Of a stretch of 64,000 nt of DNA, positions 8,702-62,513 are shown piece after piece (position 1 is the stretch's first letter; each line of letters opens with the position of its first letter). The DNA lies in NCBI GenBank assembly GCA_002269645.1, contig NIVC01000521.1, positions 124,001-188,000 of the forward strand. Reading direction: 5' to 3'. The stretch is from Macrostomum lignano (taxonomy: Eukaryota). The position numbers and the translations under genes are program-made. A model generated the notes under the pieces. The model worked only from the letters and a program-made list of their open reading frames with translations. It was not told where the DNA came from and ran no database searches.

Positions 8702-8744
8702 GTGAGTAATGCAACAGGTGCTGAGGGGCAGGAGACCGAGGGAC

Positions 8745-11309: not shown

Positions 11310-13330
11310 TAGAAGCGCAATGTCAAACATAGAAGAGCCACCATGTCAAACATAAAAGAGCCACCATGCCAAACATAAAATAAGCACTATGTCAAACATA
11401 TATGTGACTCCACGTCAAACATTTAAGAGCCACCATGTCAAAACATTTAAGAGCCACCATGTCAAACATTTAAGAGCCACCATGTCAAACATATATGTGA
11501 CTTTATGTCAAATTTTAAAGAGCCACCATTTCGAACATTAAATAGCCACTTTGTCAAACATTAGAGAGCCGCCGTGTCAAACATAAAAGAGCCACCAGGT
11601 TAAACATTAAAGAGCCACCATGTCAAACAATAAAGAGCCACCATGTCAAACATAAAAGAGCCACCATTTCGAACATTAAAGAGCCACCATTTCAAACAGT
11701 AAAGAGCCACCATGTCAAACAAAAAAGAGCCACCATGTCAAACATTAAAAAGCCACTTTGTCTAACATTAAAAGAGCCACCATGTCAAACATTTAAGAGC
11801 CACCATGTCAAACATAAAAAAGACACCATTTCGAACATTAAAGAGCCACCATTTCAAACAGTAAAGAGCCACCATGTCAAACATAAAAGAGCCACCATGT
11901 CAAACATTAAAAAGCCACTTTGTCTAACATTAAAGAGCCACCATGTCAAACATTTAAGAGCCACCATGTCAAACATAAAAGAGCCATCATGTCAAACATT
12001 AAAGAGCCACTTTGTTTAACATTAAAGAGCCACCATGTCAAACATTAAAGAGCCACCATTTCGAACATTAAAGAGCCACCATTTCGAACATAAAAGAGCC
12101 ACTTTGTTTAAAATTAAAGAGCCACCATGTCAAACATTAAAGAGCCACCATGTCAAACATAAAAGAGCCACCATGTCAAACCTAAAAGAGCCACCATGTC
12201 AAACATAAAAGAGCCACCATTTCGAACATTAAAGAGCCACCATTTCAAATAGTAAAGAGCCACCATGTCAAACATAAAAGAGCCACCATGTCAAACATTA
12301 AAAAGCCACTTTGTCTAACATTAAAGAGCCACCATGTCAAACATAAAAGAGCCACCATTTCGAACATTAAAGAGCCACCATTTCGAACATAAAAGAGCCA
12401 CCATGTCAAACATTTAAGAGCCACCATGTCAAACATTTAAGAGCCACCATGTCAAACATAAAAGAGCCATCATGTCAAACATTAAAGAGACACTTTGATT
12501 AACATTAAAGAGCCACCATGTCAAACATTAAAGAGCCACCATTTCGAACATTAAAGAGCCACCATTTCGAACATTAAAGAGCCACCATTTCGAACATAAA
12601 AGAGCCACCATGTCAAGTATAAAAGAGCCACCATGTCAAACAATAAAAAGCCACTTTGTCTAACATTAAAGAGCCACCATGTCAAACATTAAAGAGCCAC
12701 CATGTCAAACATAAAAGAGCCACCATGTCAAACCTAAAAGAGCCACCATGTCAAACATAAAAGAGCCACCATTTCGAACATTAAAGAGCCACCATTTCAA
12801 ACAGTAAAGAGCCACCATGTCAAACATAAAAGAGCCACCATGTCAAACATTAAAAAGCCACTTTGTCTAACATTAAAGAGCCACCATTTCAAACATTTAG
12901 GAGCCACCATGTCAAACATTTAAAAGCCACCATGTCAAACATTAAAGAGCCACTTTGTTTAACATTAAAGAGCCACCATGTCAAACATTAAAGAGCCACT
13001 TTGTTTAACATTAAAGAGCCACCATGTCAAACATAAAAGAGCCACCATTTCGAACATTAAAGAGCCACCATTTCGAACAGTAAAGAGCCACCATGTCAAA
13101 CAATAAAAAGCCACTTTGTCTAACATTAAAGAGCCACCATGTCAAACATAGAAGAGCCACCATGTCAGACATTGAAAAGCCACCGTATCAAACATAAAAA
13201 GAGCCACCATGTCAACATAAAAGAGCCACCATGTCAACATAAAAGAGCCACCATGTCAAACATTAAAGAGCCACCATGTCAAACATAAAAGATACACAAT
13301 TTCAAACGTAAAAGTAAGCGAATTTTAAAG
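11310..13330. repeat. 23-bp array AAAGAGCCACCATGTCAAACATT inside Helitron A
   Basis: Tandem copies; a homologous array lies in copy B at about 14590-15990. Confidence 0.9.
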
Positions 13331-17480: not shown

Positions 17481-18229
17481 TGAAAAGTTGCTAATCAATC
17501 TTGACTGCTGGTGTTTTTGGAATAATCCAGTGCTGGTATTAAAAGTTCAAAAACAGTAGTTTAATATTGTTTCATATGCTATATCAGTAAGTAATGTTTA
17601 ATCTTTGAATGTGTTTCTGTACAGCACTGTATTTTATCAATATAGTAAGTACTTCTACACTGCTACAGGTCACCCCTACAGTATTGTGGAGCATAACTTC
17701 TAGTGGCCCAAGTACCCAAAGTCGTTGCTTTTATAAGAGTTCTCACGCTTGGCGTATCTTTCAACAGTTTTAGCCATTAATACAGCTGTGTAATTAACTG
17801 TGCGTTTTACTTCTTCGCACTTAATAAATTGGCTATGTCAACTGAGCTTGATCGAATCAGATCTGGCAATTTGGCTAGCCTTTAATAAACCAGAATGCGC
17901 AGAACCAGAAGCCAATGCACTACTTATTTTAAATTTATTTTATGCGACCGTGTGCGGACCTCTGCTGTGGTTGCAAGGAAAACTAGCCCTTGCACCCAGT
18001 ACACTGTGGCTGAGGGTTTGTGTGCTCTGCCCCTCTGCTTCTGGTCTCTCTGTTCAGCTGCTATCTTCTTTCACTTATCACAAATCTAGTCTTATTGTTC
18101 TTCTACTCTCATGTTCCTCCTCTCATTTCTCTCTCCCTTCCCTCTCCCGTCTTCTCATTTCCTTCTCCCCTCTTCTCCCATTTCCCTCTCCCTTTTCTTA
18201 ATTCCCCCCCCTCTCATTTCCCTCTCCCC

Positions 18230-19150
18230 TCTCGTTTCCCCCTCCTCTCTTGTTTCCCTCTCCCCTCTCGTTTCCCTCTCCTCTCTTGTTTCCCTCTCCT
18301 CTCTTGTTTCCCTCTCCCCTCTCGTTTCCCTCTCCCCTCTCGTTTCCCCCTCCTCTCTTGTTTCCCTCTCCCCTCTCGTTTCCCTCTCCTCTCTTGTTTC
18401 CCTCTCCCCTCTCGTTTACCTCTCCTCTCTTGTTTCCCTCTCCTCTCTTGTTTCCCTCTCCCCTCTCGTTTCCCTCTCCTCTCTCGTTTCCCTCTCCTCT
18501 CTTGTTTCCCTCTCCCCTCTCGTTTCCCTCTCCTCTCTTGTTTCCCTCTCCCCTCTCGTTTCCCTCTCCCCTCTCGTTTCCCTCTCCTCTCTCGTTTCCC
18601 TCTCCTCTCTTGTTTCCCTCTCCCCTCTCGTTTCCCTCTCCTCTCTTGTTTCCCTCTCCCCTCTCGTTTCCCTCTCCCCTCTCGTTTCCCTCTCCTCTCT
18701 CGTTTCCCTCTCCTCTCTTGTTTCCCTCTCCCCTCTCGTTTTCCTCTCCCCTCTCGTTTCCCTCTCCCCTCTCGTTTCCCTCTCCTCTCTTGTTTCCCTC
18801 TCCCCTCTCGTTTCCCTCTCCTCTCTTGTTTCCCTCTCCTCTCTTGTTTCCCTCTCCCCTCTCGTTTCCCTCTCCTCTCTCGTTTCCCTCTCCTCTCTTG
18901 TTTCCCTCTCCCCTCTCGTTTCCCTCTCCTCTCTTGTTTCCCTCTCCCCTCTCGTTTCCCTCTCCCCTTTCGTTTCCCTCTCCTCTCTCGTTTCCCTCTC
19001 CTCTCTTGTTTCCCTCTCCCCTCTCGTTTTCCTCTCCCCTCTCGTTTCCCTCTCCCCTCTCGTTTCCCTCTCCTCTCTTGTTTCCCTCTCCCCTCTCGTT
19101 TCCCTCTCCTCTCTCGTTTCCCTCTCCTCTCTCGTTTCCCTCTCCTCTCT
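18230..19150. repeat. 18-bp pyrimidine minisatellite TTTCCCTCTCCCCTCTCG
   Basis: Tandem copies in PTEN intron 1. Confidence 0.95.
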
Positions 19151-19635
19151 TGTTTCGATCTCATCTCTACCTCTCTCCTCGTTTTCCCTCTCCTATCTTT
19201 CCTTTCCGATGTTTTCGTGTTATCGACCGTCTGTCTCTTATTGTTTCTCACATCCATTCCCATCTCTACCCCGAATTTCATCCCCTATTTCCCATCTTCT
19301 CCCCTCTGTGTTGACGGGAAACTGCAGTCTGCAGCAAAAGCGGGATTAACAGTATAAGCCAAACCAACTAAGCCGCTTTGATACCTATTCAACTCTTTAT
19401 CTATAGATTTCGCAGTGCTGATGAATTGCTAATTCTATAATCCGATAGCTCATTCCCGATTTGAAATTGGCAGCGCATCACTACAAAGCATATTCTCCTC
19501 TGTAGCCCCTTTTGATGCTTTGTTTTTTTGCTCATTAATACTGTAAACATATCATCAGCTATATTATTATATCAAGTCCTTTTATTCTGTTATTCTGCTT
19601 TTCTTATATTTCATAAAATGAATAACAAATTACAG

Positions 19636-26379: not shown

Positions 26380-27140
26380 CCAGCCTCCCAGTTGCTAAGA
26401 CAACCCTCCCAGATCCTCAGTTGCTGGACCAGCCTCCCAGATCCTCAGTTGCTGGACCAGCCTCCCAGATCCTCAGTTGCTGGACCAGCCTCCCAGATCC
26501 TCAGTTGCTGGGCCAGCCTCCCAGATCCTTAGTTGCTGGGCCAGCATCCCAGATCCTCAGTTGCTGGGCCAGCCTCCCAGATCCTCAGTTGCTGGGCCAG
26601 CCTCCCAGATCCTCAGTTGCTGGGCCAGCCTCCCAGATCCTCAGTTGCTGGGCCAGCCTCCCAGATCCTCAGTTGCTGGGCCAGCATCCCAGATCCTCAC
26701 TTGCTGGGCCAGCCTCCCAGATCCTCAGTTTCTGGGCCAGCCTCCCAGATCCTCAGTTTCTGGGCCAGCCTCCCAGATCCTCAGCTGCTGGGCCAGCCTC
26801 CCAGATCCTCAGTTGCTAAGCCAGCCTCCCAGATCCTCAGTTGCTGGGCCAGCCTCCCAGATCCTCAGTTGCTGGGCCAGCCTCCCAGATCCTCAGTTGC
26901 TGGGCCAGCCTCCCAGATCCTCAGTTGCTGGGCCAGCCTCCCAGATCCTCAGTTGCTGGGCCAGCCTCCCAGATCCTCAGTTGCTGGGCCAGCCTCCCAG
27001 CTCCTCAGTTGCTGGGCCAGCCTCCCAGATCCTCAGTTGCTGGGCCAGCCTCCCAGATCCTCAGTTGCTGGGCCAGCCTCCCAGATCCTCAGTTGCTGTG
27101 CCAGCCTCCCAGATCCTCAGTTGCTGGGCCAGCATCCCAA
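26380..27140. repeat. 28-bp minisatellite GCTGGGCCAGCCTCCCAGATCCTCAGTT
   Basis: Tandem copies. Confidence 0.95.
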
Positions 27141-27834
27141 ATGCTCAGTTCAGACTGCTCTTCCACAAACAATCATATCTAAAAAACCTGCATGTATTTC
27201 CTCCATACAATTTTCAGGAAGATTCGGTCAGCCGTATCCCATATTTTTTTTCTGTTTTTAATACCATCCGAGCATCGAAGTTTAGCCCTCAAAGCTGCCT
27301 CTCCGCTTATTTTTTGTATCCCTCACCTCCCAAGTTAATCGAGCTTAGGCAGCGGCTTGTCTCTCAGAGTTTCTTATTATTCCTAATTTTTAGTCGCCAT
27401 TTCCGCTACAGCCTACTTAGTGCCAGTAGCTTGCATGCATATTGCAAATTTGTTCTATTTTCACGTCGATATACTGTAGGGAGCCGATTATATATTTGCT
27501 TTGCACATATGCGAATGTGTTAGCGATTTTGTTGGTTTTTCAATCTTAGTGTTGTTTAGTGTAAATTTCTCAAGCGCGACTTTTACTGTTTTTGAGCTTC
27601 TTATATTGTCCTGCCCCGTTTAAATTCAGTGTGCTCTACTTTTGTTGAATCCTTGATTACCTTATCTGACCAAGTGTTCAGGATTTGTACGGAAATATAT
27701 AAATCTGTATCCATATTGTTGCTTGTATTTCTTATTTACTGACACGTTTATTGATCCAAAACCTCATTGTCTCCCTTACAATTTAATTATTTGCATCCTT
27801 CTGCCTTCCATGGTGTCCTGTTTGTTTAACATCT

Positions 27835-33100: not shown

Positions 33101-33177
33101 AGCTTCCGGTCAAAAGGTTCGTCAAGACAGTTGGTCAGAATTGTACATCAACTTCCGGTAGCGCAGATAAATCACAC

Positions 33178-33876
33178 CTGCAGTTGATTCCACCGGGCCA
33201 GCACGGAGTCCCGCTCGTCAGGAAACAGCGCCGGCTGAGTCAGACTAGCAAAGAAAGCCACGCTGCTCGCGGCGGAGGCCGCAGCCGACGTAGCAACTCC
33301 GGCAGGCGCCGCCGCAGTCTGGCCAAAGGCGCCAAGCGTGAACTTACCGGCCGCGCCAAATCCGGCGCCAAATGAGGCGGCGGAAGAGACGGCGGCGCCG
33401 GCCGGTTTGCCAAATCCAAACGGTGCCGAAGTTGCGGCGCCGCCCGCCGGAGCGGGGAACGCGAAACCGGAAGTGGCAGCAGAGGCGGCCGGTGCGGCAA
33501 ATCCGAAACCGGAAGTGGCCGTAGAGGCGGACGGTGCGGCAAATCCGAAACCAGAAGTGGCCGTAGAGGCGGACGGTGCGGCAAATCCGAAACCGGAAGT
33601 GGCCGTAGAGGCGGCCGGTGCGGCAAATCCGAAACCGGAAGTGGCCGTAGAGGCGGCCGGTGCGGCAAATCCGAAACCGGAAGTGGCAGTCGTGGCGGCA
33701 GGTGCGGAAAATCCAAAACCAGATGTGGCCGTAGAAGCAGCCGGTGCGGCAAACCCGAAACCGGATGTGGCGGTGGTGGCAGCGGTTGGGAAGCTGAACG
33801 CAGATGTTGTAGCAGCGGCAGGCGCCGCGCTGGCGCCGAAGTTGAAAGTGGAGCCGCTAGAAGTGCCGCCGAACAT
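33178..33876 (-). CDS. NUP54: Nup54 coding exon 1 (FG-repeat region through DERDSVLARWNQLQ)
   Basis: FG/GFGF repeats and the Nup54 signature DERDxxLAxWNQLQ; donor CAG|GTGTGA. The joined CDS is 1773 nt (590 aa). Confidence 0.92.
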
Positions 33877-39422: not shown

Positions 39423-39710
39423 CTCAGTAGGTGATTTCCGAAACTGCTTGCGTATAACAAAGAGTATTGGCTCCTGAAAGCGGAGCAGCACATACTCAAC
39501 ACCTTGCATGCCGAGCAGATGCTCCGGATTAAGCCTCTGCATTCGAATCTGCTCATTATTGCAGTGATGATCGTAAAATGGATTTGTACGTTCGCAAAAA
39601 TAGTCCAATATATTAGCTGGCGTTGGCTGCTGCATGTTCCACCGATTCGCATCTGACCAGGTGAGCGACAGCAGCTTGGACCAGGTCGACGCATCCTGCG
39701 AGTGCGCCAT
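39423..39710 (-). CDS. MED6: Mediator subunit 6 coding exon 1 (…ILDYFCERTNPFYDHHCNNEQIRMQRL...GVEYVL...EPILFVIRKQ)
   Basis: MED6 N-terminal motifs; donor GAG|GTAAAA. The joined CDS is 744 nt (247 aa). Confidence 0.94.
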
Positions 39711-39764
39711 CGGGCTCGGGGTTGAAGGATGCTGCAGCGGGGCAGAGAGTGTGCGGGGTGGCTG

Positions 39765-40335
39765 TGCCTGTGCTAATGACTGAGCTATCCTGCCTCAGTG
39801 CCTGTGCTAATGACTGAGCTGTCCTGCCTCAGTGCCTGTGCTAATGACCGAGCTATCCTGCCTCAGTGCCTGTGCTAATGACTTAGCTATCCTGCCTCAG
39901 TGCCTGTGCTAATGACTTAGCTATCCTGCCTCAGTGCCTGTGCTAATGACTGAGCTATCCTGCCTCAGTGCCTGTGCTAATGACTGAGCTGTCCTGCCTT
40001 AATGCCTGTGCTAATGACTGAGCTATTCTGCCTCAATGCCTGTGCTAATGACTGAGCTATCCTGCCTCAGTGCCTGTGCTAATGACTGAGCTATCCTGCC
40101 TCAGTGCCTGTGCTAATGACTGAGCTATCCTGCCTCAGTGCCTGTGCTAATGACTGAGCTATCCTGCCTCAGTGCCTGTGCTAATGACTGAGCTGTCCTG
40201 CCTTAATGCCTGTGCTAATGACTGAGCTATTCTGCCTCAATGCCTGTGCTAATGACTGAGCTATCCTGCCTCAGTGCCTGTGCTAATGACTGAGCTATCC
40301 TGCCTCAGTGCCTGTGCTAATGACTGAGCTATCTG
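39765..40335. repeat. 34-bp minisatellite GTGCCTGTGCTAATGACTGAGCTATCCTGCCTCA
   Basis: Tandem copies between the SerRS gene and MED6. Confidence 0.95.
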
Positions 40336-40349
40336 CCTTATTAAATCAA

Positions 40350-40848: not shown

Positions 40849-41337
40849 TCACAGCATAGGCTGCCGTTTCAGTCTAGCAAAATACATCGACTTCATTGGT
40901 GGCCGTTTCAGCATGGTCAACTCGTTAGTAAATGGAGCCATATAGGGCGCCAGTGCCGGCGGTAGGGCTACACTGCCGCCATCTGAGCATTGATGCGTCT
41001 CTACCAGAGCTTTAATAGTTCGAGTAATTGCACAAGCCGTGCCATTGAGAGTGTGCGGAAATCCGCCTAGATTAGTACCAGCTAATCCAATGCCCAGCCT
41101 GCGGCTCTGATAATCCGTACAGTTGGAAGCGCTGCAGACTTCGCCAAACCTGGCCTCGGATGGTAGCCAGGCTTCCCAATCGAATTTGCGATAAGCCGGA
41201 TTGCCCAACTCTTCGGTGGCCATGTCTAATAGGCGGCAGTGCAGGCCCAGCTGGTTCAGTATGGCCTCCTGCACTGACAGCAGGCGCTGGTGCTCGGACT
41301 CGCTGTCCGCCGGCGAGGTCAGGCTGAACAGCTCCAC
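40849..41337 (-). CDS. SARS2: Mitochondrial seryl-tRNA synthetase, terminal exon (VELF...AYRKFDWEAWLP...EVCSASNCTDYQSRRL...HTLNGTACAITR)
   Basis: Class IIa SerRS motif 3 region; CCGCCCAG acceptor. Confidence 0.93.
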   Translation of the reverse strand: MELFSLTSPADSESEHQRLLSVQEAILNQLGLHCRLLDMATEELGNPAYRKFDWEAWLPSEARFGEVCSASNCTDYQSRRLGIGLAGTNLGGFPHTLNGTACAITRTIKALVETHQCSDGGSVALPPALAPYMAPFTNELTMLKRPPMKSMYFARLKRQPML

Positions 41338-41419
41338 CTGGGCGGAAAGGGGGGTGAAGCCGTTTTTTGGAGGTGTAAACTAGTCACGCTGAGCTTCATT
41401 TACTCGGTAGATAGTTGTA

Positions 41420-41790
41420 GCTTGTAGTAGTAGTAGTAGTAGTAGTAAAAGTAGTAGTAGTAGTAGTAGTAGTAGTAAAAGTAGTAGTAGTAGTTAGTAG
41501 TAGTAGTAGTTGAAGATGTAGTAGTAGTAGTAGTAGTTAGTAGTAGTAGTAGCAGTAGTAGTAGTAGTAGTAGTTGAAGATGTAGTAGTAGTAGTAGTAG
41601 TTAGTAGTAGTAGTAGCAGTAGTAGTAGTAGTAGTAGTAGTAGTAGTTGAAGATGTAGTAGTAGTAGTAGTAGTAGTTAGTAGTAGTAGATGTAGTAGTA
41701 GTAGTAGTAGTAGTTGTAGTAAGAGTAGTAGTAGCAGTATTCGTAGTAGTAGTAATAGTAGTAGTAGTAGTAGCAGTAGTAGTAGACTGC
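41420..41790. repeat. (TAG)n microsatellite in SerRS intron 2
   Basis: About 370 bp of TAG repeats with interruptions. Confidence 0.97.
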
Positions 41791-41819
41791 GCAAAATGAT
41801 TAATCCGCTAATCTCATAC

Positions 41820-42077
41820 CTTAGTAAACTGCGGCACGCGGTACATGGCGTCCTCAACTTTAGAGATCTCCCGTCTGTAGCAGCGTGACACGGCGCAGAG
41901 GCGCACAGGCAGCTGGTCAATACGGTAGACGCGGCCAGCCAGGTAACCGGCCAGAGCTATCTCTGCCGTGCCAATCAGTGCCATGGAGCCAGTTAAAAAT
42001 ACCTGCGACCTGGTGCCTTGAGTCACAAAGCCGCACGCGTCAACCAGCTCCGGCGGGACCAGTTCGGGCACGCCAAT
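41820..42077 (-). CDS. SARS2: Mitochondrial SerRS exon 2 (IGVPELVPPELVDACGF...LIGTAEIALAG...LPVRLCAVSRCYRRE...YRVPQFTK)
   Basis: GTAE serine-binding motif and motif 2; TTTTACCAG acceptor; AAG|GTATGA donor. Confidence 0.92.
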
Positions 42078-42244
42078 CTGGTAAAAGCGATGTAAATATT
42101 GTATCCCGTAGAAATATACTAGCGATACTACTTTCAAAAATACAAGTAGCAAGTAGCGAAATGCTTACTTAAATAAGCATTTTTAAGAAAGCAATTTTAG
42201 ACTAATTTCGTTGAAATCTTTTCTTGGCGATTCTATTTAGCATG

Positions 42245-43665
42245 GATTCTAGAAGCTTGGGATTATTGGGGGATTCTAGAAACTTGGGATTATCGGGGGA
42301 TTCTAGAAGCTTGGGATTATTGGGGGATTCTAGAAGCTTGGGATTATCGGGGGATTCTAGAAACTTGGGATTATTGGGGGATTCTAGAAGCTTGGGATTA
42401 TCGGGGGATTCTAGAAACTTGGGATTATCGGGGGATTCTAGAAGCTTGGGATTATCGGGGGATTCTAGAAACTTGGGATTATTGGGGGATTCTAGAAACT
42501 TGGGATTATTGGGGGATTCTAGAAACTTGGGATTATCGGGGGATTCTAGAAACTTGGGATTATCGGGGGATTCTAGAAGCTTGGGATTATCGGGGGATTC
42601 AAGAAACTTGGGATTATTGGGGGATTTTAGAAACTTGGGATTATCGGGGGATTCTAGAAACTTGGGATTATTGGGGGATTCTAGAAACTTGGGATTATCG
42701 GGGGATTCTAGAAACTTGGGATTATCGGGGGATTCTAGAAGCTTGGGATTATCGGGGGATTCAAGAAACTTGGGATTATCGGGGGATTCTAGAAACTTGG
42801 GATTATTGGGGGATTCAAGAAACTTGGGATTATCGGGGGATTCTAGAAACTTGGGATTATTGGGGGATTCTAGAAGCTTGGGATTATCGGGGGATTCAAG
42901 AAACTTGGGATTATCGGGGGATTCTAGAAACTTGGGATTATTGGGGGATTCAAGAAACTTGGGATTATCGGGGGATTCTAGAAACTTGGGATTATTGGGG
43001 GATTCTAGAAGCTTGGGATTATCGGGGGATTCAAGAAACTTGGGATTATCGGGGGATTCTAGAAACTTGGGATTATTGGGGGATTCTAGAAGCTTGGGAT
43101 TATCGGGGGATTCAAGAAACTTGGGATTATCGGGGGATTCTAGAAGCTTGGGATTATTGGGGGATTCTAGAAGCTTGGGATTATCGGGGGATTCTAGAAA
43201 CTTGGGATTATTGGGGGATTCTAGAAGCTTGGGATTATCGGGGGATTCTAGAAACTTGGGATTATTGGGGATTCTAGAAGCTTGGGATTATCGGGGGATT
43301 CTAGAAACTTGGGATTATTGGGGGATTCTAGAAACTTGGGATTATTGGGGGATTCTAGAAGCTTGGGATTATCGGGGGATTCTAGAAGCTTGGGATTATC
43401 GGGGGATTCTAGAAGCTTGGGATTATCGGGGGATTCTAGAAACTTGGGATTATCGGGGGATTCTAGAAGCTTGGGATTATCGGGGGGATTCTAGAAGCTT
43501 GGGATTATCGGGGGATTCTAGAAGCTTGGGATTATCGGGGGATTCTAGAAACTTGGGATTATCGGGGGATTCTAGAAGCTTGGGATTATCGGGGGGATTC
43601 TAGAAGCTTGGGATTATCGGGGGGATTCTAGAAGCTTGGGATTAGCGGGGGATTCTAGAAGCTCG
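42245..43665. repeat. 27-bp minisatellite GATTCTAGAAGCTTGGGATTATCGGGG in SerRS intron 1
   Basis: About 50 tandem copies; explains the GDSRSLGLS pseudo-ORF. Confidence 0.97.
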
Positions 43666-43749
43666 TGATTGAGAAATTCTAGAATGCGATTATAAAATTT
43701 AAAAAGAAATCAAACGCATAAATAAAAACAAATAATTAAAAATGACTAC

Positions 43750-44316
43750 CTGCTGAAAGCCGAACTCCCGAGCAACATCCAGCGCTAGTCCAATCAACGC
43801 AGTTTCTAACTGTGCTAACTGGCCTCTAAAATAGTGAGTCCGTTGGCCAGTCAGCAAGGACAGATTTCTGGACGCCAACAATCTCAGATTCTGCAACAGA
43901 GTGCGCGCGTCAAAGCCGCGCCGCTCCTCAGTCGATGGCGCTGTGCCAATCAGGCGAACCAGCCGGCTGTTGGCCTCGCCGCCAACGGGCGAGTCCGGGT
44001 GAGTCCAGTTCGGCAAGCGGGCCGCTGCCGCCACCGCCGCGGCGCCGTCCGACGACTCGGCGCGTAAACGCAGCGCCGCGTCAACTAAATCGGGATCGGC
44101 GCCGCGTTGGCGCGCATTTTGGCGCGCGGCCGCCGCACGGACGGGATCTGACAGGCTTTCCCAATCGATCTGCGGTTCGAAGAACGGCGCGGATTTGGGA
44201 GCGTCAGGATTCTTGGCTGGCCGGTGCTCAACGCTGCTAGGGGTGCAGCAGCCACTGAGCCAACGGCTGCCGCGGGTCAGCACGGCCTGGCACAGGCGCC
44301 GGTGTAGGTGCGGCAC
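43750..44316 (-). CDS. SARS2: Mitochondrial SerRS exon 1 (Arg-rich leader, IDW...NARQRG...LPNWTHPDSPVG...motif 1); 5' boundary uncertain (GTG at 44316 or acceptor at 44287|44286)
   Basis: LPNxTHPxxPVG motif; GQRTHYFRGQLAQLETALI (motif 1 region); donor CAG|GTAGTC. No in-frame ATG. Confidence 0.85.
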
Positions 44317-44361
44317 TGACGCCAGCGGTTGAGGCAGCGGAGAGCAAATGAGGGCTTCTAG

Positions 44362-47300
44362 CCGTCTAATGCTGTTTGTTTACTGTCTAATGCTGTTTGT
44401 TTACTGTCTAATGCTGCTTATTTACTGTCTAATGCTGTTTGTTTACTGTCTAATGCTGTTTGTTTACAGCCTAATGCTGTTTCTTTACTGTCTAATGCTG
44501 TTTCTTTACAGCCTAATGCTGTTTCTTTACTGTCTAATGCTGTTTGTTTAAAGCCTAATGCTGTTTCTTTACTGTCTAATGCTGTTTGTTTACAGCCTAA
44601 TGTTGTTTCTTTACTGTCTAATGCTGTTTGTTTACTGTCTAATGCTGTTTGTTTACTGTCTAATGCTGTTTCTTTACTGTCTAATGCTGTTTCTTTACAG
44701 CCTAATGCTGTTTATTTACTGTCTAATCCTGCTTCTTTACAGCCTAATGCTGTTTCTTTACTGTCTAATGCTGTTTGTTTACAGCCTAATGCTGTTTGTT
44801 TACTGTCTAATGCTGTTTGTTTACTGTCTAATGCTGTTTGTTTACTGTCTAATGCTGTTTGTTTACTGTCTAATCCTGCTTCTTTACAGCCTAATGCTGT
44901 TTCTTTACTGTCTAATGCTGTTTCTTTACAGCCTAATGCTGTTTCTTTACTGTCTAATGCTGTTTGTTTACAGCCTAATGCTGTTTGTTTACAGCCTAAT
45001 GCTGTTTGTTTACAGCCTAATGCTGTTTCTTTACTGTCTAATGCTGTTTGTTTACAGCCTAATGTTGTTTCTTTACTGTCTAATGCTGTTTGTTTACTGT
45101 CTAATGCTGTTTGTTTACTGTCTAATGCTGTTTGTTTACTGTCTAATGCTGTCTGTTTACTGTCTAATGCTGCTTCTTTACTGTCTAATGCTGTTTCTTT
45201 ACAGCCTAATGCTGTTTGTTTACTGTCTAATGCTGTTTGTTTACTGTCTAATGCTGCTTCTTTACTGTCTAATGCTGTTTGTTTACAGCCTAATGCTGTT
45301 TCTTTACAGCCTAATGCTGTTTGTTTACAGCCTAATGCTGTTTCTTTACTGTCTAATGCTGTTTATTTACTGTCTAATGCTGTTTCTTTACAGCCTAATG
45401 CTGTTTGTTTACTGTCTAATGCTGTTTGTTTACTGTCTAATGCTGCTTCTTTACTGTCTAATGCTGTTTGTTTACAGCCTAATGCTGTTTCTTTACTGTC
45501 TAATGCTGTTTCTTTACAGCCTAATGCTGTTTCTTTACTGTCTAATGCTGTTTGTTTACAGCCTAATGCTGTTTGTTTACTGTCTAATGCTGTTTGTTTA
45601 CAGCCTAATGCTGTTTGTTTACTGTCTAATGCTGTTTGTTTACTGTCTAATGCTGTTTGTTTACTGTCTAATGCTGTTTGTTTACTGTCTAATCCTGCTT
45701 CTTTACAGCCTAATGCTGTTTCTTTACTGTCTAATGCTGTTTCTTTACAGCCTAATGCTGTTTCTTTACTGTCTAATGCTGTTTCTTTACTGTCTAATGC
45801 TGTTTATTTACTGTCTAATGCTGTTTCTTTACAGCCTAATGCTGTTTCTTTACTGTCTAATGCTGTTTGTTTACTGTCTAATGCTGTTTGTTTACTGTCT
45901 AATGCTGTTTGTTTACAGCCTAATGCTGTTTCTTTACAGCCTAATGCTGTTTGTTTACAGCCTAATGCTGTTTCTTTACAGCCTAATGCTGTTTATTTAC
46001 TGTCTAATGCTGTTTATTTACAGTTAACGCTGCTTCTTTACAGCCTAATGCTGTTTCTTTACTGTCTAATGCTGCTTCTTTACAGTCTAATGCTGCTTCT
46101 TTACTGTCTAATGCTGTTTGTTTACAGCCTAATGCTGTTTCTTTACTGTCTAATGCTGTTTGTTTACAGCCTAATGTTGTTTCTTTACTGTCTAATGCTG
46201 TTTGTTTACTGTCTAATGCTGTTTGTTTACTGTCTAATGCTGTTTCTTTACTGTCTAATGCTGTTTCTTTACAGCCTAATGCTGTTTATTTACTGTCTAA
46301 TGCTGTTTCTTTACAGCCTAATGCTGTTTCTTTACTGTCTAATGCTGTTTGTTTACAGCCTAATGCTGTTTGTTTACTGTCTAATGCTGTTTGTTTACTG
46401 TCTAATGCTGTTTGTTTACTGTCTAATCCTGCTTCTTTACAGCCTAATGCTGTTTCTTTACTGTCTAATGCTGTTTCTTTACAGCCTAATGCTGTTTCTT
46501 TACTGTCTAATGCTGTTTCTTTACTGTCTAATGCTGTTTGTTTACAGCCTAATGCTGTTTGTTTACAGCCTAATGCTGTTTCTTTACTGTCTAATGCTGT
46601 TTGTTTACTGTCTAATGCTGTTTGTTTACTGTCTAATGCTGTTTGTTTACTGTCTAATGCTGTCTGTTTACTGTCTAATGCTGCTTCTTTACTGTCTAAT
46701 GCTGTTTCTTTACAGCCGAATGCTGTTTGTTTACTGTCTAATGCTGTTTGTTTACTGTCTAATGCTGCTTCTTTACTGTCTAATGCTGTTTGTTTACAGC
46801 CTAATGCTGTTTCTTTACAGCCTAATGCTGTTTGTTTACAGCCTAATGCTGTTTCTTTACTGTCTAATGCTGTTTATTTACTGTCTAATGCTGTTTCTTT
46901 ACAGCCTAATGCTGTTTGTTTACTGTCTAATGCTGTTTGTTTACTGTCTAATGCTGTTTGTTTACAGCCTAATGCTGTTTCTTTACTGTCTAATGCTGTT
47001 TCTTTACAGCCTAATGCTGTTTCTTTACTGTCTAATGCTGTTTGTTTACAGCCTAATGCTGTTTGTTTACTGTCTAATGCTGTTTGTTTACTGTCTAATG
47101 CTGTTTGTTTACTGTCTAATGCTGTTTGTTTACTGTCTAATCCTGCTTCTTTACAGCCTAATGCTGTTTCTTTACTGTCTAATGCTGTTTCTTTACAGCC
47201 TAATGCTGTTTCTTTACTGTCTAATGCTGTTTCTTTACTGTCTAATGCTGTTTGTTTACAGCCTAATGCTGTTTGTTTACAGCCTAATGCTGTTTCTTTA

Positions 47301-49340
47301 CTGTCTAATGCTGTTTGTTTACAGCCTAATGTTGTTTCTTTACTGTCTAATGCTGTTTGTTTACTGTCTAATGCTGTTTGTTTACTGTCTAATGCTGTTT
47401 GTTTACTGTCTAATGCTGTCTGTTTACTGTCTAATGCTGTCTGTTTACTGTCTAATGCTGCTTCTTTACTGTCTAATGCTGTTTCTTTACAGCCTAATGC
47501 TGTTTGTTTACTGTCTAATGCTGTTTGTTTACTGTCTAATGCTGCTTCTTTACTGTCTAATGCTGTTTGTTTACAGCCTAATGCTGTTTCTTTACAGCCT
47601 AATGCTGTTTGTTTACAGCCTAATGCTGTTTCTTTACTGTCTAATGCTGTTTATTTACTGTCTAATGCTGTTTATTTACAGTTAACGCTGCTTCTTTACA
47701 GCCTAATGCTGTTTCTTTACTGTCTAATGCTGCTTCTTTACAGTCTAATGCTGCTTCTTTACTGTCTAATGCTGCTTCTTTACTGTCTAATGCTGCTTCT
47801 TTACTGTCTAATGCTGCTTCTTTACTGTCTAATGCTGCTTCTTTACTGTCTAATGCTGCTTCTTTACAGTCTAATGCTGCTTCTGTACAGCCTAATGCTG
47901 CTTCTTTACTGTCTAATGCTGCTTCTTTACAGCCTAATGCTGTTTCTTTACAGCCAAATGCTGCTTCTTTACAGCCTAATGCTGTTTCTTTACAGCCTAA
48001 TGCTGCTTCTTTACAGCCTAATGCTGTTTCTTTACTGTCTAATGCTGCTTCTTTACTGTCTAATGCTGCTTCTTTACAGTCTAATGCTGCTTCTTTACTG
48101 TCTAATGCTGCTTCTTTACTGTCTAATGCTGCTTCTTTACAGTCTAATGCTGCTTCTGTACAGCCTAATGCTGTTTCTTTACTGTCTAATGCTGCTTCTT
48201 TACTGTCTAATGCTGCTTCTTTACTGTCTAATGCTGTTTCTTTACTGTCTAATGCTGTTTCTTTACAGCCTAATGCTGTTTCTTTACAGTCTAATGCTGC
48301 TTCTTTACTGTCTAATGCTGTTTATTTACTGTCTAATGCTGTTTATTTACAGTTAACGCTGCTTCTTTACAGTCTAATGCTGCTTCTTTACTGTCTAATG
48401 CTGCTTCTTTACTGTCTAATGCTGCTTCTTTACTGTCTAATGCTGCTTCTTTACTGTCTAATGCTGCTTCTTTACTGTCTAATGCTGCTTCTTTACAGTC
48501 TAATGCTGCTTCTGTACAGCCTAATGCTGCTTCTTTACTGTCTAATGCTGCTTCTTTACAGCCTAATGCTGTTTCTTTACAGCCAAATGCTGCTTCTTTA
48601 CAGCCTAATGCTGTTTCTTTACAGCCTAATGCTGCTTCTTTACAGCCTAATGCTGTTTCTTTACTGTCTAATGCTGCTTCTTTACTGTCTAATGCTGCTT
48701 CTTTACAGTCTAATGCTGCTTCTTTACTGTCTAATGCTGCTTCTTTACTGTCTAATGCTGCTTCTTTACAGTCTAATGCTGCTTCTGTACAGCCTAATGC
48801 TGTTTCTTTACTGTCTAATGCTGCTTCTTTACTGTCTAATGCTGCTTCTTTACTGTCTAATGCTGTTTCTTTACTGTCTAATGCTGTTTCTTTACAGCCT
48901 AATGCTGTTTCTTTACAGTCTAATGCTGCTTCTTTACTGTCTAATGCTGTTTATTTACTGTCTAATGCTGTTTATTTACAGTTAACGCTGCTTCTTTACA
49001 GCCTAATGCTGTTTCTTTACTGTCTAATGCTGCTTCTTTACTGTCTAATGCTGTTTCTTTACTGTCTAATGCTGCTTCTTTACTGTCTAATGCTGCTTCC
49101 TTACTGTCTAATGCTGTTTCTTTACAGCCTAATGCTGTTTCTTTACAGTCTAATGCTGCTTCTTTACAGTCTAATGCTGCTTCTTTACTGTCTAATGCTG
49201 CTTCTTTACAGTCTAATGCTGCTTCTTTACTGTCTAATGCTGTTTCTTTACTGTCTAATGCTGCTTCTTTACAGTCTAATGCTGCTTCTTTACAGCCTAA
49301 TGCTGCTTCTTTACAGCCTAATGCTGTTTCTTTACTGTTT
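44362..49340. repeat. About 5-kb satellite of a 21-bp monomer CTGTCTAATGCTGTTT(G/C)TTTA with higher-order structure
   Basis: Roughly 235 monomers; explains the LMLFVYC pseudo-ORFs. Confidence 0.98.
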
Positions 49341-49711
49341 AATACTGCTCTTCACTTTTTTTTGCTGCATCTTGCTTTTTGATGCCGTTTCGAATGATTT
49401 TTCCACCACGTACAACTGGGATCGGATTAGTAAGTCAGGAGGACTTGCCCAGGTAGCAGGGCACCCAACAACTAAGAATCTGGGAGACTACAAAACTTAG
49501 ACCTGCTTATCTAGAAATTTGAAAAGCAACTATTCAGATTCTAAATTAAATAAATAATGAATAAACTTAATACTAAAACAGCAACAATCCGCCTTCCAAA
49601 GATAAAATACAATAGACCGAGCTTTATTGGTACATCAATAAAACATTAATATAAAATATACAATTCAGCAAAGCGAACAATAGTCAAAACTAGTGTAGGG
49701 ACGTCACTATA

Positions 49712-49932: not shown

Positions 49933-50424
49933 TCAAGCGTGCACCCCGCCATAGTCTTGCTCATCTCCGCTGTCATCGCCACCGCCGTCCCCGTCGTCGG
50001 CATCATCGTCATCCTGGTGACTACTGGGCGCACTGACGCAGGCCTGCAGGCTGACGCCTCTGGCCAGGCGAGTCAGGGCGGCTTCAACGAATGCAGTCTC
50101 GCCTCGTCTCAGCCTCTCTAACAGGTCGCATAGTAGGCGGGCAACCTCGTAGCAACTGCCATCGTCAAATACACTGCTAAACAGCTCGTCAATGTACTGT
50201 TCAAGCACTTCGGCTAGTTCGTCTGGTGCCAGGGCGCTGTTCTCCAGCATCCAATGGCACACCGCCTGCTGCATCCAGTCCACCTTAGCCTGTGTGTCTG
50301 GCCCGCCAGCCTGGTGTTCCACTAAGAGTCTGACAGCTGTCCAAGGAGCAAATACGCGATGGACAACTGGCAGAAATTCTGCCTGGCTAACTGCCTGTTT
50401 GGAGGCTGATGAAGATGAGGCCAT
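49933..50424 (-). CDS. TSR2: Pre-rRNA-processing protein TSR2 homolog, single exon, 163 aa
   Basis: WGG-domain pattern F---V--VF--WTAVRLLVEHQAGG----K--W...DEL...DDGS--EVA--L and an acidic C-terminus. Confidence 0.9.
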   Translation of the reverse strand: MASSSSASKQAVSQAEFLPVVHRVFAPWTAVRLLVEHQAGGPDTQAKVDWMQQAVCHWMLENSALAPDELAEVLEQYIDELFSSVFDDGSCYEVARLLCDLLERLRRGETAFVEAALTRLARGVSLQACVSAPSSHQDDDDADDGDGGGDDSGDEQDYGGVHA

Positions 50425-59131: not shown

Positions 59132-61471
59132 TCTCTAACTATAAAAATCAAAACTCTGTGTGTCTGTGTGTGTGTGTGTCTGTGTGTGGACAATTTTGAT
59201 CGCTATGGACTCCCAAACCGCTCAACCAAATGACACCAAATTTTACACCCACCCTAAACTCACTACGGAGAATGTCTTAGGCTACCTTTAAATTTCCTAA
59301 ATTTGAGTCTTCCTACCTAAAAGTGCAAAAAACTGCTCAAAATGCGCAATTTTTTTACTAAAGCCTCCTTAGCGCCGCTCCACTTCTACCGATCCTCTTC
59401 AAATTTGACACAATCAATTTTCAACTATTTTGACACAATCGTGTAAAATTTCGAGTCTCAAAGTTAATCCTGAGCGGTGCTGTGCACTTTTAAAGTTAGG
59501 CTGTTTTTTTCAGCGTAGCAACCACCCCAACCTCCGCCCGCCTGCCTCTCTTTCCCGATCCTGATCTGGGCCCAGATGTGTAAAAGGGGTTTCAAAATTG
59601 ACTAACTTTTGGCTGCCATAAGTTTGCTCCACGTGAAGCGATTAACTTCAAATTTGACACAATTATTTATTGACTCATTCTTTTTCTAATTGTAAAGTCT
59701 CAACTCTGTATCTCAATCAGAACAGAAACTGTAGGCATGTGAAGTCTGTCTGCTTTTTCTGTTGTTTGCCGCTCATCCAACTCATTCCCCCAGACGAAGG
59801 ATCAGGCGATAGGGCTCAATGTACATAGCGAATGTACAGTGTTTTGGAATAACTTTTTAATAGCCTTCTCTGTACCCACGCGAGTGGAGAGGCGTGTGGA
59901 GAGGAGAGAGTTTAGCGAGAGATTCAAACCACTGTCCTCTGTATAGACAAGTCGCAGCAGTTAAACAAGGATGGCAAATCAAGGCGATGTGGGATGGTTT
60001 GTAAAAATAGCGAAAAATTAATGAATAACTGATTGCAATGCATGCAATCCTATTATCCTACTAAATTAGTTACACCATGGAAATTTTAACATTAAGATTT
60101 GCATAAGGTACTTTAAAATTTAAATGGCTTCCTAAGAAATGCGTATTTCCTTGGTTGCTAGACTGCTGCAGACTGTGGTGGTGGAGCTGGAGAATGGAGA
60201 TACACAAATTCCTCTCAGGGCTGCTAATTGGCCAGAAAGATTACGTGATTAAAGCATGAGAAATGATAACAACCATGATAGTACTACGTCCCATGATAGT
60301 ACTTTCGAAGCAGTGATTGGCAGATTTTTATCTCAAAGGCCAGATAAAGAATCCAGCTCAGGGCTGCGGGCTAGACTATTAGAGAGGGAGGAGGGGCGAG
60401 AGGGGGATAAGAGAAATGATAGAAGATAACAGGAGAGACGAGGGGGTTGAGGAGAGAGCAGAGAATATGGGACGAAGAATCGAGAGGAGGGAAGAGAGAA
60501 GGGAGAGGAAATAGTAGAGGTGAGAAGATGGAGAGAGAAGAGGGGAGAGATGAGACAGGATCGATCAGAGAGGAGAGTAGAGAAGAGTGAGAAGAGATGA
60601 GAGAACAGAGAGGTAGATGAGAGAGGATCGAGAGGAGAGATTCGAAAGGATAGAGAAGAGAGGAGATAAGAGGGGGAGAGAGGGGGAGAGAGAGGAGTGA
60701 GAAGAGGAGATAAGAGATAAGAGATAAGAGAGAGAGAGAGAGAGTTGAGAAAGAAGAGAGGAGAAAGGAGAGATGATAGAGTAAAGGGAAGAGGAGGAGA
60801 GAGGAAAGAGATGAGATTGTAGAGATGAGACAGATGAAAGGAGAGATGAGAGAGTAAAGATGAGAGATTAAAAAGGTGAGAGGAGAGTGCAGAGAGACGA
60901 GAGAAGATAATAGAGGAGAGAGAGTATAGAAGAGGGAAGAGAAAAGAAGAGAGGAGCAAGGAAAGAGAGGAATCAGAAGAGGGGAAAGAAAAGAGTTCAC
61001 CGGAAAGAGGAGAGTAAAGATGACAGAAAAGCGAGGGGGATGAGAGAGCAAAGATGAGAGTGAACAGACGAACGAGAGATGAGAAGTGAGATAAGAGAAA
61101 TAAAGGAGGAGAGAGTGGAGAGAGAAGAGAGAAGACAAGAGAGGGAGAGAGTATAGAAGAGAAGAGAAGAGAAGAGGAGAAAGGAGAAAAGAAAGAGAGG
61201 ATTTAGAAGAGGTGAAAGAGAGAGTACAGAGGAGATAAGTGAGAGAACGTATAAGAGAGTAAATATGACAGATGAGAGAGCAGAGATCAGGGTGAACAGA
61301 CGAGAGATGGGAGAGTAGAGAGAACAGAGGAGAGATAAGAGAGAAGAGATTACAGAGACTAGAGGAGAGAGGAGAGACAGGGAGAGAGAAGTGAGTGAAG
61401 AGAGAGAAGAGGAAAGAGGAGAATGAAGAGAGGAGAGAGTAGAGAGGAGAAGAGAGATGGGAGAGGAGAGA

Positions 61472-61518
<47 letters not shown>

Positions 61519-62513
61519 AGTGAGAAAGGAGAACAGAAAAAAGATAAAAGAAGAGAAAGGAATGATGAGAGAGCAAAGACGAGAGAAAAAAGAGGTGAGG
61601 GAAGAGACGAGAGAAGAGGGGAGAGATGAGAGAGTAGAGGAGAGAGGAGAGAGTAGAGGAGAGGGGAGAGGAGAGAGAAAACGAAAAAGTAGAGAGGAGA
61701 AAGGAGAGGAGAGAGAAACGAAGAGACAAGAGATGAGATAAGAGAGATGAAAGAGAAGAGAGATGAGAGAGTAGGGGAGAGAGTTAAGAGAAGAGAGAAA
61801 AGAATAGAAAGGAGAAGGAAGATAAGAGAGAAGAGGGGGTAAGAGGAGAGAGGAGAGGGTGAGAGAGGAGAGAGGAGAGGAGAGAGAGAAGAAGAGACAA
61901 GAGATGAGATAAGAGAGATGAAAGAGAAGAGAGATGAGGGAAGATACGAGAGAAGAGGGGAGAGATGAGAGAGTAGGGGAGAGAGTTAAGAGAAGAGAGT
62001 TAAGAGAAGAGAGAAAAGAATAGAAAGGAGAAGGAAGATAAGAGAGAAGAGGGGGTGAGAGGAGAGAGGAAAGGAGAGAGAAAAGAAGAGACAAGAGATG
62101 AGATAAGAGAGATGAAAGAGAAGAGAGATGACGGAAGATACGAGAGAAGAGGGGAGAGAGGAGAGAGGAGAGACGAGGGATGAAAGAGATGAGAGGAAAC
62201 AAAGAGAAGATAGAAATTTTAAAGGATCCAAGGGACGTAGGGAGAGTCAAGGGAGAGACCAGAGTTTAGCAATATATGTTTTAGAGTCAGACAGACATTG
62301 CCTGACATTCTGCGCGGTACCCCAGCCAACAATATCAATGTTTGCCTCAAATTCTAATTTTACACGAATGTGCTCCATTTTATGTCTACCTCTATCCTAC
62401 TAACTATTAACAAGTTTTTGTTTGTGTATGGCCTTAGATTTCAGAATACATGCAAAAGTAGTTCTGGGGATTGGAATTCCCCGGGTTCAAAATCCGCGGG
62501 TTTCAACAGCTTG
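59132..62513 (+). mobile_element. Candidate second non-autonomous Helitron-like element carrying an AG-rich array
   Basis: A|TC start followed by (TGTG/TCTG)n and a CTCAACC motif, like the family at 10149. Candidate 3' end: imperfect hairpin CCCGGG...CCGCGGG followed by CTTG|T. The 3' end is uncertain. Confidence 0.4.
60370..62200. repeat. Purine-rich (AG/GAGAG) low-complexity array with internal block duplications
   Basis: About 1.8 kb almost devoid of C on the plus strand; explains the Leu/Ser-rich pseudo-ORFs. Confidence 0.92.

What the first reader, a model, noticed from the sequence alone, without database searches (positions are those of the whole stretch)
44270..44370. Mitochondrial SerRS has no start codon; a spliced-leader AUG could supply it
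Seen: the SerRS reading frame is closed upstream by an in-frame TAA in the 21-bp satellite. No in-frame ATG occurs in exon 1; the first Met is deep in exon 2, past motif 1. The AG sites at 44358, 44355 and 44316 are phase 1 and the one at 44366 is phase 2, but TGTGCCAG|GCC at 44287|44286 is phase 0. Established: flatworm spliced leaders end in AUG, which can act as the initiator Met. Inference: trans-splicing at 44286 gives MAVLTRGSRWLSGCCTPSS..., an Arg-containing N-terminus with no acidic residue before Glu21, resembling a mitochondrial targeting peptide (428 aa total).
Basis: partly seen in the sequence, partly recalled or inferred. Interest (0 to 1): 0.78.

Follow-up and report, generated by a model that had tools for sequence, protein, structure and literature searches.

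The report
ATG-less mitochondrial SerRS gene, flatworm
The Macrostomum lignano gene for mitochondrial seryl-tRNA synthetase really has no start codon of its own; the likeliest fix is a known one in flatworms, the trans-spliced leader RNA donating its terminal AUG, but no RNA data could be reached to prove it or to fix the exact splice site.

Summary
The window is Macrostomum lignano (identical to NIVC01000521.1). The minus-strand gene is a three-exon mitochondrial SerRS. Its frame is closed upstream by TAA 44382-44380 in a 5-kb 21-bp satellite. It has no in-frame ATG until 41984 in exon 2 (residue 212, past motif 1). Of the AG sites in the 77 unique bases upstream, only 44288-44287 is in frame, and ATG joined at 44286 gives 428 aa.

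An assembly error is unlikely. Three paralogous loci are identical here, and all five public models are 5'-partial. The proposed upstream ATG exon (49370) is rejected, because it is frameshifted in one copy and stopped in another.

The species' 35-nt spliced leader ends in ATG, 30-39% of its genes are trans-spliced, and the gene sits in an operon-like same-strand cluster behind TSR2. The mechanism is established in other flatworms.

It remains unproven. No RNA evidence was reachable. Public models start 18-33 nt upstream of the proposed acceptor. The 77 nt are exon-like in GC content and conservation. An out-of-frame CAG lies nearer the pyrimidine tract. Older ML2 models imply a CAG allele that would make another in-frame acceptor at 44334.

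If true, this is a new member of a known kind. Interest is modest.

The parts
44364..49347 (-). 21-bp satellite (about 237 units) between TSR2 and SerRS. It has no sense-strand ATG. Read as outron or intercistronic spacer.
   Evidence: TRF; ATG scan. Array length differs among paralogous loci, with 221, 66 and 39 core motifs.
44380..44382 (-). In-frame TAA that closes the SerRS frame upstream.
44287..44363 (-). 77 unique bases between the satellite and the proposed acceptor. They contain a pyrimidine tract (ccctcatttgctctccgctgcctc) and in-frame CTG 44337, CTG 44325, GTG 44316 and CTG 44295. Read as either outron or leader/coding sequence.
   Evidence: 100% identical in three loci. GC 0.66, against 0.24-0.30 for the unique parts of intron 1 and 0.52 for the 3' end of intron 2.
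44287..44288 (-). Candidate trans-splice acceptor AG (tgtgcCAG|GCC). It is the only in-frame AG in the unique upstream segment of this haplotype.
44316..44317 (-). Competing out-of-frame CAG (gcgtCAG|TGCC). It is the first AG after the pyrimidine tract. An SL-ATG joined here gives a 13-codon ORF.
44335..44337 (-). CTG (Leu) in all Mlig_3_7 loci. ML2-derived UniProt models read Gln, implying CAG. That would create a phase-0 acceptor with the exon starting at 44334.
43750..44286 (-). SerRS exon 1 (179 codons, no ATG in frame), with donor CAG|gtagtc.
42078..43749 (-). Intron 1, mostly a 27-bp satellite (42244-43660).
41820..42077 (-). SerRS exon 2 (86 codons). It holds the first in-frame ATG at 41984-41982.
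41338..41819 (-). Intron 2, with a GTA microsatellite (41407-41785).
40849..41337 (-). SerRS exon 3 (162 codons plus TGA).
49935..50424 (-). Upstream same-strand gene TSR2 (Pfam WGG). Its AATAAA is at 49628-49623.
49356..49370 (-). The only sense-strand ATG between TSR2 and SerRS (ATGCAGCAAAAAAAA|GTGAAG, phase 0). Rejected as a 5' exon.
   Evidence: Not conserved: 2-nt deletion in L001 and a TAA at codon 4 in L003.

Best explanation
This is the nuclear gene for mitochondrial seryl-tRNA synthetase of Macrostomum lignano. Its genomic first coding exon carries no initiator codon.

The most likely mechanism has these steps:
1. The pre-mRNA is either a read-through from the upstream TSR2 gene across the satellite or starts somewhere upstream.
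2. It is trans-spliced to the 35-nt spliced leader CGGTCTCTTACTGCGAAGACTCAATTTATTGCATG.
3. The leader's last three bases become the initiator AUG.

In the haplotype of this window, the only AG that puts that AUG in frame while keeping an N-terminal presequence is 44288-44287. That gives MAVLTRGSRWLSG... (428 aa), which would be imported into mitochondria.

Shown: the gene structure, the absence of ATG, the frame relations, the identity of the paralogues, and the absence of a conserved upstream ATG exon. From the literature: the SL sequence, the frequency of trans-splicing, and SL-AUG initiation in other flatworms. Inferred: that this gene is trans-spliced at all, which acceptor is used, and that translation starts at the SL AUG.
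For: - Species and gene identity: 100% match to M. lignano BOX15_Mlig004933g4, best other hits are metazoan mitochondrial SerRS, and Pfam PF00587 is found.
- No in-frame ATG for 211 codons, in three loci and five public models, all 5'-partial.
- Only the exon start at 44286 is in frame.
- The SL ends in ATG in M. lignano and in two congeners.
- 30-39% of genes are trans-spliced, and operon spacers are inflated by repeats.
- Same-strand order TSR2>SerRS>Med6>Rieske>Nup54 in all loci. The repeat-adjusted spacer is about 330 nt.
- SL-AUG use is documented. In S. mansoni it is in frame in 28% of trans-spliced transcripts and more than 40 cDNAs need it. In E. granulosus 143 of 187 SL clusters are predicted full length when the SL ATG is taken as the start codon, and some of them, mitochondrial proteins included, have no nearby ATG of their own.
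- The N-terminal length before the conserved PQIDW core (38 aa) matches insect orthologues.
- The sequence has no acidic residue before E21 and is mildly amphipathic.
Against: - No RNA-level evidence was reachable.
- GenBank models from a pipeline that cuts genes at SL peaks start at -33, -21 and -18 relative to 44286, so assembled RNA reads through the proposed acceptor.
- The acceptor does not match [T/C]TNCAG and has only 12 of 20 pyrimidines upstream. The out-of-frame CAG at 44316 is the first AG after the pyrimidine tract.
- The 77 nt upstream have exon-like GC (0.66) and a coding-like codon-position GC pattern in frame 0. They show zero differences among copies whose introns differ by 1-3% and whose spacers differ by 4-8%.
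- An in-frame AG is expected by chance.
Confidence: 0.45

Rival explanations
1. The SL AUG is the initiator, but at a different in-frame acceptor 48 nt upstream (ctcatttgctctccgCAG|CCTCAACC, exon start 44334). This site exists only if base 44336 is A, as the ML2-derived models imply. The product would be MPQPLASVPHLHRRLCQAVLTRG... (444 aa), with a longer and more basic presequence.
For: - ML2-based UniProt models P0123 and P0124 read Q where Mlig_3_7 reads L. P0124 is otherwise identical to P0001 over 427 aa.
- The site lies directly behind the best pyrimidine tract (14 of 20) and is phase 0.
- It would explain the exon-like GC content and conservation of -48..-1.
- It would explain why all three public 5' ends (-33, -21, -18) fall between -48 and 0. 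SL-junction reads cannot map with STAR EndToEnd, so such models come out 5'-truncated.
- The extension adds 2 Arg and 2 His and no acidic residue.
Against: All three loci of the polished Mlig_3_7 assembly, this window included, have CTG there, so no acceptor exists in the sequence in hand. The ML2 base is known only from a protein translation. The distance from the CUCAU branch-like site to this AG would be only 14 nt.
Confidence: 0.15
2. Non-AUG initiation. A non-trans-spliced mRNA, or one trans-spliced out of frame, starts within or just upstream of the 77 unique bases. Translation begins at an in-frame near-cognate codon (CUG 44337, CUG 44325, GUG 44316 or CUG 44295), giving a 2-16 residue longer presequence.
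For: - Four in-frame near-cognates exist.
- Public models include this region as coding, and one begins upstream of GTG 44316.
- The region is exon-like in GC content, codon-position pattern and conservation.
- The extension is presequence-like.
- Non-AUG starts for mitochondrial forms of aminoacyl-tRNA synthetases are known in yeast (ALA1, GRS1). This last point is from my own knowledge and was not tested here.
Against: - None of the four codons combines a purine at -3 with a G at +4.
- A gene relying solely on non-AUG initiation is rare in animals, whereas SL-AUG use is common in flatworms.
- The leader would be very short.
- The first AUG of such an mRNA is an out-of-frame 10-residue ORF (MRANAAPIPI) near 44117.
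Confidence: 0.2
3. A cis-spliced upstream exon carrying a genomic ATG is missing from all annotations. The satellite would then be an intron.
For: In this copy ATG 49370 is followed after 5 codons by a phase-0 GTGAAG, which could join 44286 (MQQKK-AVLTRG...). Satellite-filled introns exist in this same gene.
Against: - That ATG is the only sense-strand ATG in 5.3 kb.
- It is not conserved as an exon. L001 has a 2-nt deletion that changes the phase, and L003 has a TAA at codon 4 and no compatible donor.
- The only ATG/donor pair shared by all copies lies inside the TSR2 3'UTR, upstream of its poly(A) signal.
- No public model contains such a junction.
- GTGAAG lacks the G at +5 of the GT[G/A]AG consensus.
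Confidence: 0.07
4. Artefact or decay: an assembly error removed the ATG, or the locus is a pseudogene.
For: The region is repeat-rich and abuts a 5-kb satellite. The genome is polyploid, with many near-identical copies.
Against: - Three separate scaffolds have identical sequence here, and two models from an independent assembly are also ATG-less.
- The 427-codon ORF is intact in all copies, every residue invariant among the aligned orthologues is kept, and about half the changes in exon 1 are synonymous.
- No other mitochondrial SerRS of this species appeared in the search.
Confidence: 0.03

Closest known systems
[quoted passage not shown]
   Same: The organism has an SL ending in AUG. The candidate acceptor puts that AUG in frame with a conserved ORF that has no genomic ATG near its conserved N-terminus. 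In E. granulosus, SL-AUG-dependent transcripts include mitochondrial proteins.
   Different: Trans-splicing of this gene is not demonstrated, and public models read through the acceptor. The documented cases are in Neodermata (Schistosoma, Echinococcus). In the papers I could read, SL-AUG use has not been analysed for the free-living Macrostomum.
SL-resolved operons of M. lignano (Ustyantsev and Berezikov 2021; Wudarski et al. 2017)
   Same: Same-strand neighbours. The spacer between the TSR2 poly(A) signal and SerRS is about 330 nt once the satellite is subtracted, below the 1-kb criterion. The paper notes that repeats inflate operon spacers.
   Different: The criterion also requires the downstream gene to be SL trans-spliced, which I could not verify. 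The raw spacer is 5.3 kb here and 1.5-2.2 kb in the paralogues.
Metazoan mitochondrial seryl-tRNA synthetase (SARS2 type)
   Same: 36-43% identity over 85-97% of the length to mollusc, brachiopod, nemertean, echinoderm and insect mitochondrial SerRS. It has the class II core domain, all invariant motif residues, and a divergent N-terminal arm without a Pfam Seryl_tRNA_N hit, as in most of those orthologues.
   Different: Orthologues, including the cestode Mesocestoides corti, have genomic ATG starts. Here none exists.
Non-AUG initiated mitochondrial aaRS isoforms (yeast ALA1 ACG, GRS1 UUG; from my own knowledge)
   Same: In-frame near-cognate codons lie upstream of the conserved core, and the extension looks like a presequence.
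   Different: Those genes also make an AUG-initiated cytosolic form. Here no AUG form exists, the codon contexts are poor, and the organism has a ready alternative in the SL AUG.

Membership tests
SL-AUG-initiated ORF of flatworms | The species has an SL RNA whose leader ends in AUG. | tested here: met
   Literature gives the M. lignano SL as ...TTATTGCATG. M. cliftonense and M. hystrix have the same ending. No SL gene lies in the window.
SL-AUG-initiated ORF of flatworms | The mature mRNA carries the SL joined at a defined AG acceptor. | not testable with these tools
   No reads, ESTs or transcript contigs were reachable. Public gene models start 18-33 nt upstream of the candidate AG and not at it.
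SL-AUG-initiated ORF of flatworms | The SL AUG is in frame with the main ORF, with no intervening stop. | tested here: met
   ATG plus exon from 44286 gives 428 aa. All other AGs in the unique upstream segment give ORFs of 43 codons or fewer.
SL-AUG-initiated ORF of flatworms | No genomic in-frame AUG can give the conserved N-terminus. | tested here: met
   The first in-frame ATG is codon 212, past motif 1. No conserved upstream ATG exon exists.
SL-AUG-initiated ORF of flatworms | Translation actually starts at the SL AUG. | not testable with these tools
   This needs ribosome profiling, N-terminal proteomics or reporter assays.
M. lignano trans-splice acceptor | [T/C]TNCAG motif at the junction, found at 44% of annotated sites. 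| tested here: not met
   The site reads tgtgcCAG|G, with G at -5 rather than T. The motif is absent from 56% of real sites, so this is weak negative evidence.
SL-resolved operon (downstream gene) | Same-strand neighbour with a repeat-adjusted spacer under 1 kb. | tested here: met
   TSR2 AATAAA is at 49628-49623. The 21-bp array spans 44364-49347. About 330 nt of unique spacer remain.
SL-resolved operon (downstream gene) | The downstream gene is SL trans-spliced. | not testable with these tools
   Same reason as for the SL junction: no RNA data were reachable.
Mitochondrial seryl-tRNA synthetase | Class II core domain with intact motifs, and closest relatives that are mitochondrial SerRS. | tested here: met
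   PF00587, E=1.9e-22. Top hits are annotated mitochondrial SerRS. 60 columns are invariant across all 13 aligned sequences, this one included.
Mitochondrial seryl-tRNA synthetase | N-terminal mitochondrial targeting peptide. | tested here: inconclusive
   Only crude measures were available. MAVLTRGSRWLSG... has 2 Arg and no acidic residue before E21. Its hydrophobic moment is 0.59, reached by 9% of shuffles. Longer alternatives score the same or better. No dedicated predictor was available.
Non-AUG initiated ORF | In-frame near-cognate codon in a favourable context (purine at -3, G at +4). | tested here: not met
   The contexts are tctccgCTGc, caaccgCTGg, gcgtcaGTGc and cggcgcCTGt. None has a purine at -3.

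The most novel reading that the evidence does not exclude
The sole mitochondrial SerRS of M. lignano may not use a fixed start at all.

One reading is that it is translated only from a non-AUG codon (CUG or GUG) on a very short leader.

The other is that a single T/A polymorphism at 44336 switches the trans-splice acceptor between 44334 and 44286. That would change the length of the mitochondrial presequence by 16 residues between haplotypes or paralogues. Mitochondrial translation would then depend on a polymorphic SL acceptor.
Probability: 0.2. Interest if true: 0.55.

Novelty: new member of a known kind. Interest (0 to 1): 0.3.

Why it matters
If confirmed, an essential housekeeping enzyme, the only mitochondrial SerRS of this model flatworm, could be made only after trans-splicing. 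That would extend SL-AUG-dependent initiation from parasitic Neodermata to the early-branching free-living Macrostomorpha.

It would also explain why all public models of this gene are flagged 'partial'. The practical value lies in annotation. Genes like this are systematically left 5'-incomplete by pipelines that trim the SL together with its ATG. The same logic could rescue other 'partial' M. lignano models.

It does not change what is known about the mechanism.

Tried and rejected
RNA-level evidence, none obtained:
- A protein search with the N-terminal 138 aa found only an unrelated low-complexity hit, and not even the known model. This index is therefore not exhaustive for short queries.
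- Look-ups of the ML2 model and of the exon-1 genomic ORF found nothing on record.
- Supplement searches for Mlig004933, Mlig012582 and SARS2 in Wudarski 2017, Grudniewska 2018 and Wiberg 2023 found nothing.
- Wasik 2015 and Cheng 2006 are not held.

Other checks:
- SL sequence in the window or loci: absent, so there is no genomic SL-like exon.
- Upstream cis exon: every ATG/donor/acceptor combination was enumerated in three copies. Many chance combinations exist, and none is conserved except one inside the TSR2 3'UTR.
- Paralogue comparison to detect coding constraint upstream of 44286: the 77 nt are identical in all copies, so no substitutions can be classified. Conservation relative to introns is only weakly significant.
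- Targeting-peptide heuristics do not discriminate between the alternative N-termini.
- Pyrimidine-tract counts do not discriminate either. The candidate has 12 of 20, against 13 and 17 of 20 for the gene's two cis acceptors.
Full report
**What is there.** The window is Macrostomum lignano. The assembled product is 100% identical to GenBank PAA81622.1 (BOX15_Mlig004933g4), and the window is base-for-base the same as scaffold NIVC01000521.1 over the region compared.

The gene is on the minus strand and has three coding exons: 44286 or further upstream to 43750, 42077-41820, and 41337-40849. Intron 1 is mostly a 27-bp satellite, and intron 2 holds a GTA microsatellite.

The product has the class II core domain (PF00587). 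Its best relatives outside the species are metazoan mitochondrial seryl-tRNA synthetases at 36-43% identity. All residues invariant among 12 orthologues are present. It is an intact mitochondrial SerRS gene.

**Checking the observation.** In the exon-1 frame there is no Met. The frame runs open for 31 codons upstream of 44286 and is closed by TAA 44382-44380 inside the 21-bp satellite at 44364-49347. The first in-frame ATG is 41984-41982 in exon 2, codon 212, after motif 1.

I joined ATG to the sequence after every AG between the satellite and the conserved core. Exon starts at 44365, 44357, 44354 and 44315 give ORFs of 13-43 codons. Only 44286 gives the full 428-aa ORF, MAVLTRGSRWLSGCCTPSSVE.... 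Two further phase-0 AGs (exon starts 44226 and 44211) would remove the presequence.

However, an in-frame AG is expected about once per 48 nt. The acceptor itself carries little statistical weight. The weight lies in the missing ATG.

**Is the missing ATG real?** Three separate loci of the Mlig_3_7 assembly (window/L002, L001, L003) carry the gene. All show the same order, TSR2>SerRS>Med6>Rieske>Nup54, on one strand. Their sequence is identical from the satellite edge to beyond the acceptor.

All three GenBank proteins are flagged 'partial', and so are both UniProt models from the older ML2 assembly. None starts with Met. The ORF is intact in all copies, which differ by 2-7 amino acids. An assembly error or a pseudogene is therefore very unlikely.

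**Is there an upstream ATG exon?** Between the TSR2 poly(A) signal (AATAAA 49628-49623) and 44287 there is a single ATG on the sense strand, at 49370. It is followed by ATGCAGCAAAAAAAA|GTGAAG, in phase with 44286.

It is not conserved. L001 has a 2-nt deletion that changes the phase, and L003 has TAA as its fourth codon. I enumerated all ATG/donor/acceptor combinations in the three copies. Only chance combinations appear, and the one shared by all lies inside the TSR2 3'UTR. I reject this rival for the interval examined.

**What supports donation of the AUG by the spliced leader.**
- M. lignano has one 35-nt SL, CGGTCTCTTACTGCGAAGACTCAATTTATTGCATG, and 30-39% of its genes are trans-spliced. 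The SL of two congeners also ends in ATG.
- Published work on the species shows that operon spacers are inflated by repeats. It uses a repeat-adjusted spacer below 1 kb as the operon criterion. Here the spacer is 5.3 kb raw, but about 330 nt once the satellite is removed. A downstream operon gene needs the SL for its cap.
- Initiation at the SL AUG is established in flatworms. [quoted passage not shown] In E. granulosus 143 of 187 SL clusters are predicted full length using the SL ATG as the start codon, though nearby ATGs often exist, and the in-frame cases listed include mitochondrial proteins.
- The resulting N-terminus leaves 38 residues before the conserved PQIDW core, as in insect orthologues. 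It has two Arg and no acidic residue before E21.

**What speaks against the exact model.**
- No RNA evidence was reachable with these tools.
- The three GenBank models start 33, 21 and 18 nt upstream of 44286, at positions not preceded by AG. They come from a pipeline that cuts genes exactly at SL peaks where such peaks were seen. Assembled RNA therefore reads through the proposed acceptor. These are assembled models, not mapped cap sites, so the point weakens the claim without refuting it.
- The acceptor (tgtgcCAG|G) lacks the [T/C]TNCAG motif and has 12 of 20 pyrimidines. The out-of-frame CAG at 44316 is the first AG after the only good pyrimidine tract.
- The 77 nt between the satellite and 44286 look like exon. 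GC is 0.66, against 0.64 for exon 1 and 0.24-0.30 for intron 1. The codon-position GC pattern in frame 0 is coding-like. There are no differences among copies whose introns differ by 1-3% and whose spacers differ by 4-8%.

**An unexplained lead.** The two ML2-derived models read ...CSPQPQP... where all Mlig_3_7 loci encode ...CSPLPQP.... One of them is otherwise identical to its Mlig_3_7 counterpart over 427 residues.

Gln implies CAG at 44337-44335. That would create a phase-0 acceptor, ctcatttgctctccgCAG|CCT, directly behind the pyrimidine tract. The SL AUG would then give MPQPLASVPHLHRRLCQAVLTRG..., with four basic residues and two His before the first acidic one.

This variant would also explain two other things: the exon-like character of -48..-1, and the fact that all three public 5' ends fall between -48 and 0. 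With end-to-end read mapping, SL-junction reads are lost and models come out 5'-truncated. I cannot check the base. In the sequence in hand it is T.

**Verdict.** The gene has no start codon of its own. The best-supported explanation is that the SL supplies it.
- About 0.15 more for the upstream in-frame site in a CAG haplotype.
- About 0.2 for non-AUG initiation in the 77-nt leader. Near-cognates are present, but none has a purine at -3.
- About 0.07 for a missed cis exon.
- About 0.03 for an artefact.

The mechanism is already known, so this would be a new member of a known kind. It is useful mainly for fixing 'partial' gene models and for extending SL-AUG dependence to a free-living, early-branching flatworm. 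A simple search of public reads for the three possible SL junctions would settle it.

Noticed in passing
window 1-64000, e.g. 1865-2656, 11320-13314, 18217-19156, 26405-27150, 39764-40338, 42244-43660, 44364-49347: More than 25 distinct minisatellite arrays (periods 14-36 bp) lie in 64 kb. Almost every intron and spacer of the same-strand gene cluster has its own private satellite family.
   Followed up: partly
window 44364-49347; L001 about 8350-9950; L003 about 9100-9940: The 21-bp array between TSR2 and SerRS varies from 39 to 221 core motifs among three paralogous loci whose flanks are 95-100% identical. It has no ATG on the sense strand.
   Followed up: yes
window 44335-44337: Mlig_3_7 has CTG (Leu) in three loci, but ML2-derived UniProt models (A0A1I8FZJ3, A0A1I8IAV9) read Gln. 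A CAG here would be an in-frame splice acceptor.
   Followed up: partly
window 39710-39763: Med6, the next gene downstream, starts 54 nt after its own 34-bp satellite. It has gctgCAG| 21 nt before its ATG, and an SL AUG joined there would also be in frame (MHPSTSP-MAHS...), with no stop. The architecture matches SerRS, but with a genomic ATG.
   Followed up: no
window 33172-33876 (minus): A 234-aa ORF made of FG-type repeats (SGFGFAAPAASTAT...) is the N-terminus of the Nup54-like gene called in the paralogous loci. It overlaps a 42-bp tandem repeat, so the FG repeats are a coding minisatellite.
   Followed up: no
window 60452-62215: A 1.7-kb purine-only (GA-rich) low-complexity tract has extreme strand skew: GC skew 0.75 and AT skew 0.59.
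   Followed up: no
L001, L002, L003: gene after Med6: The Rieske-domain gene is annotated with very different lengths in the three paralogous loci (631, 380 and 622 aa). That suggests further model problems in this cluster.
   Followed up: no
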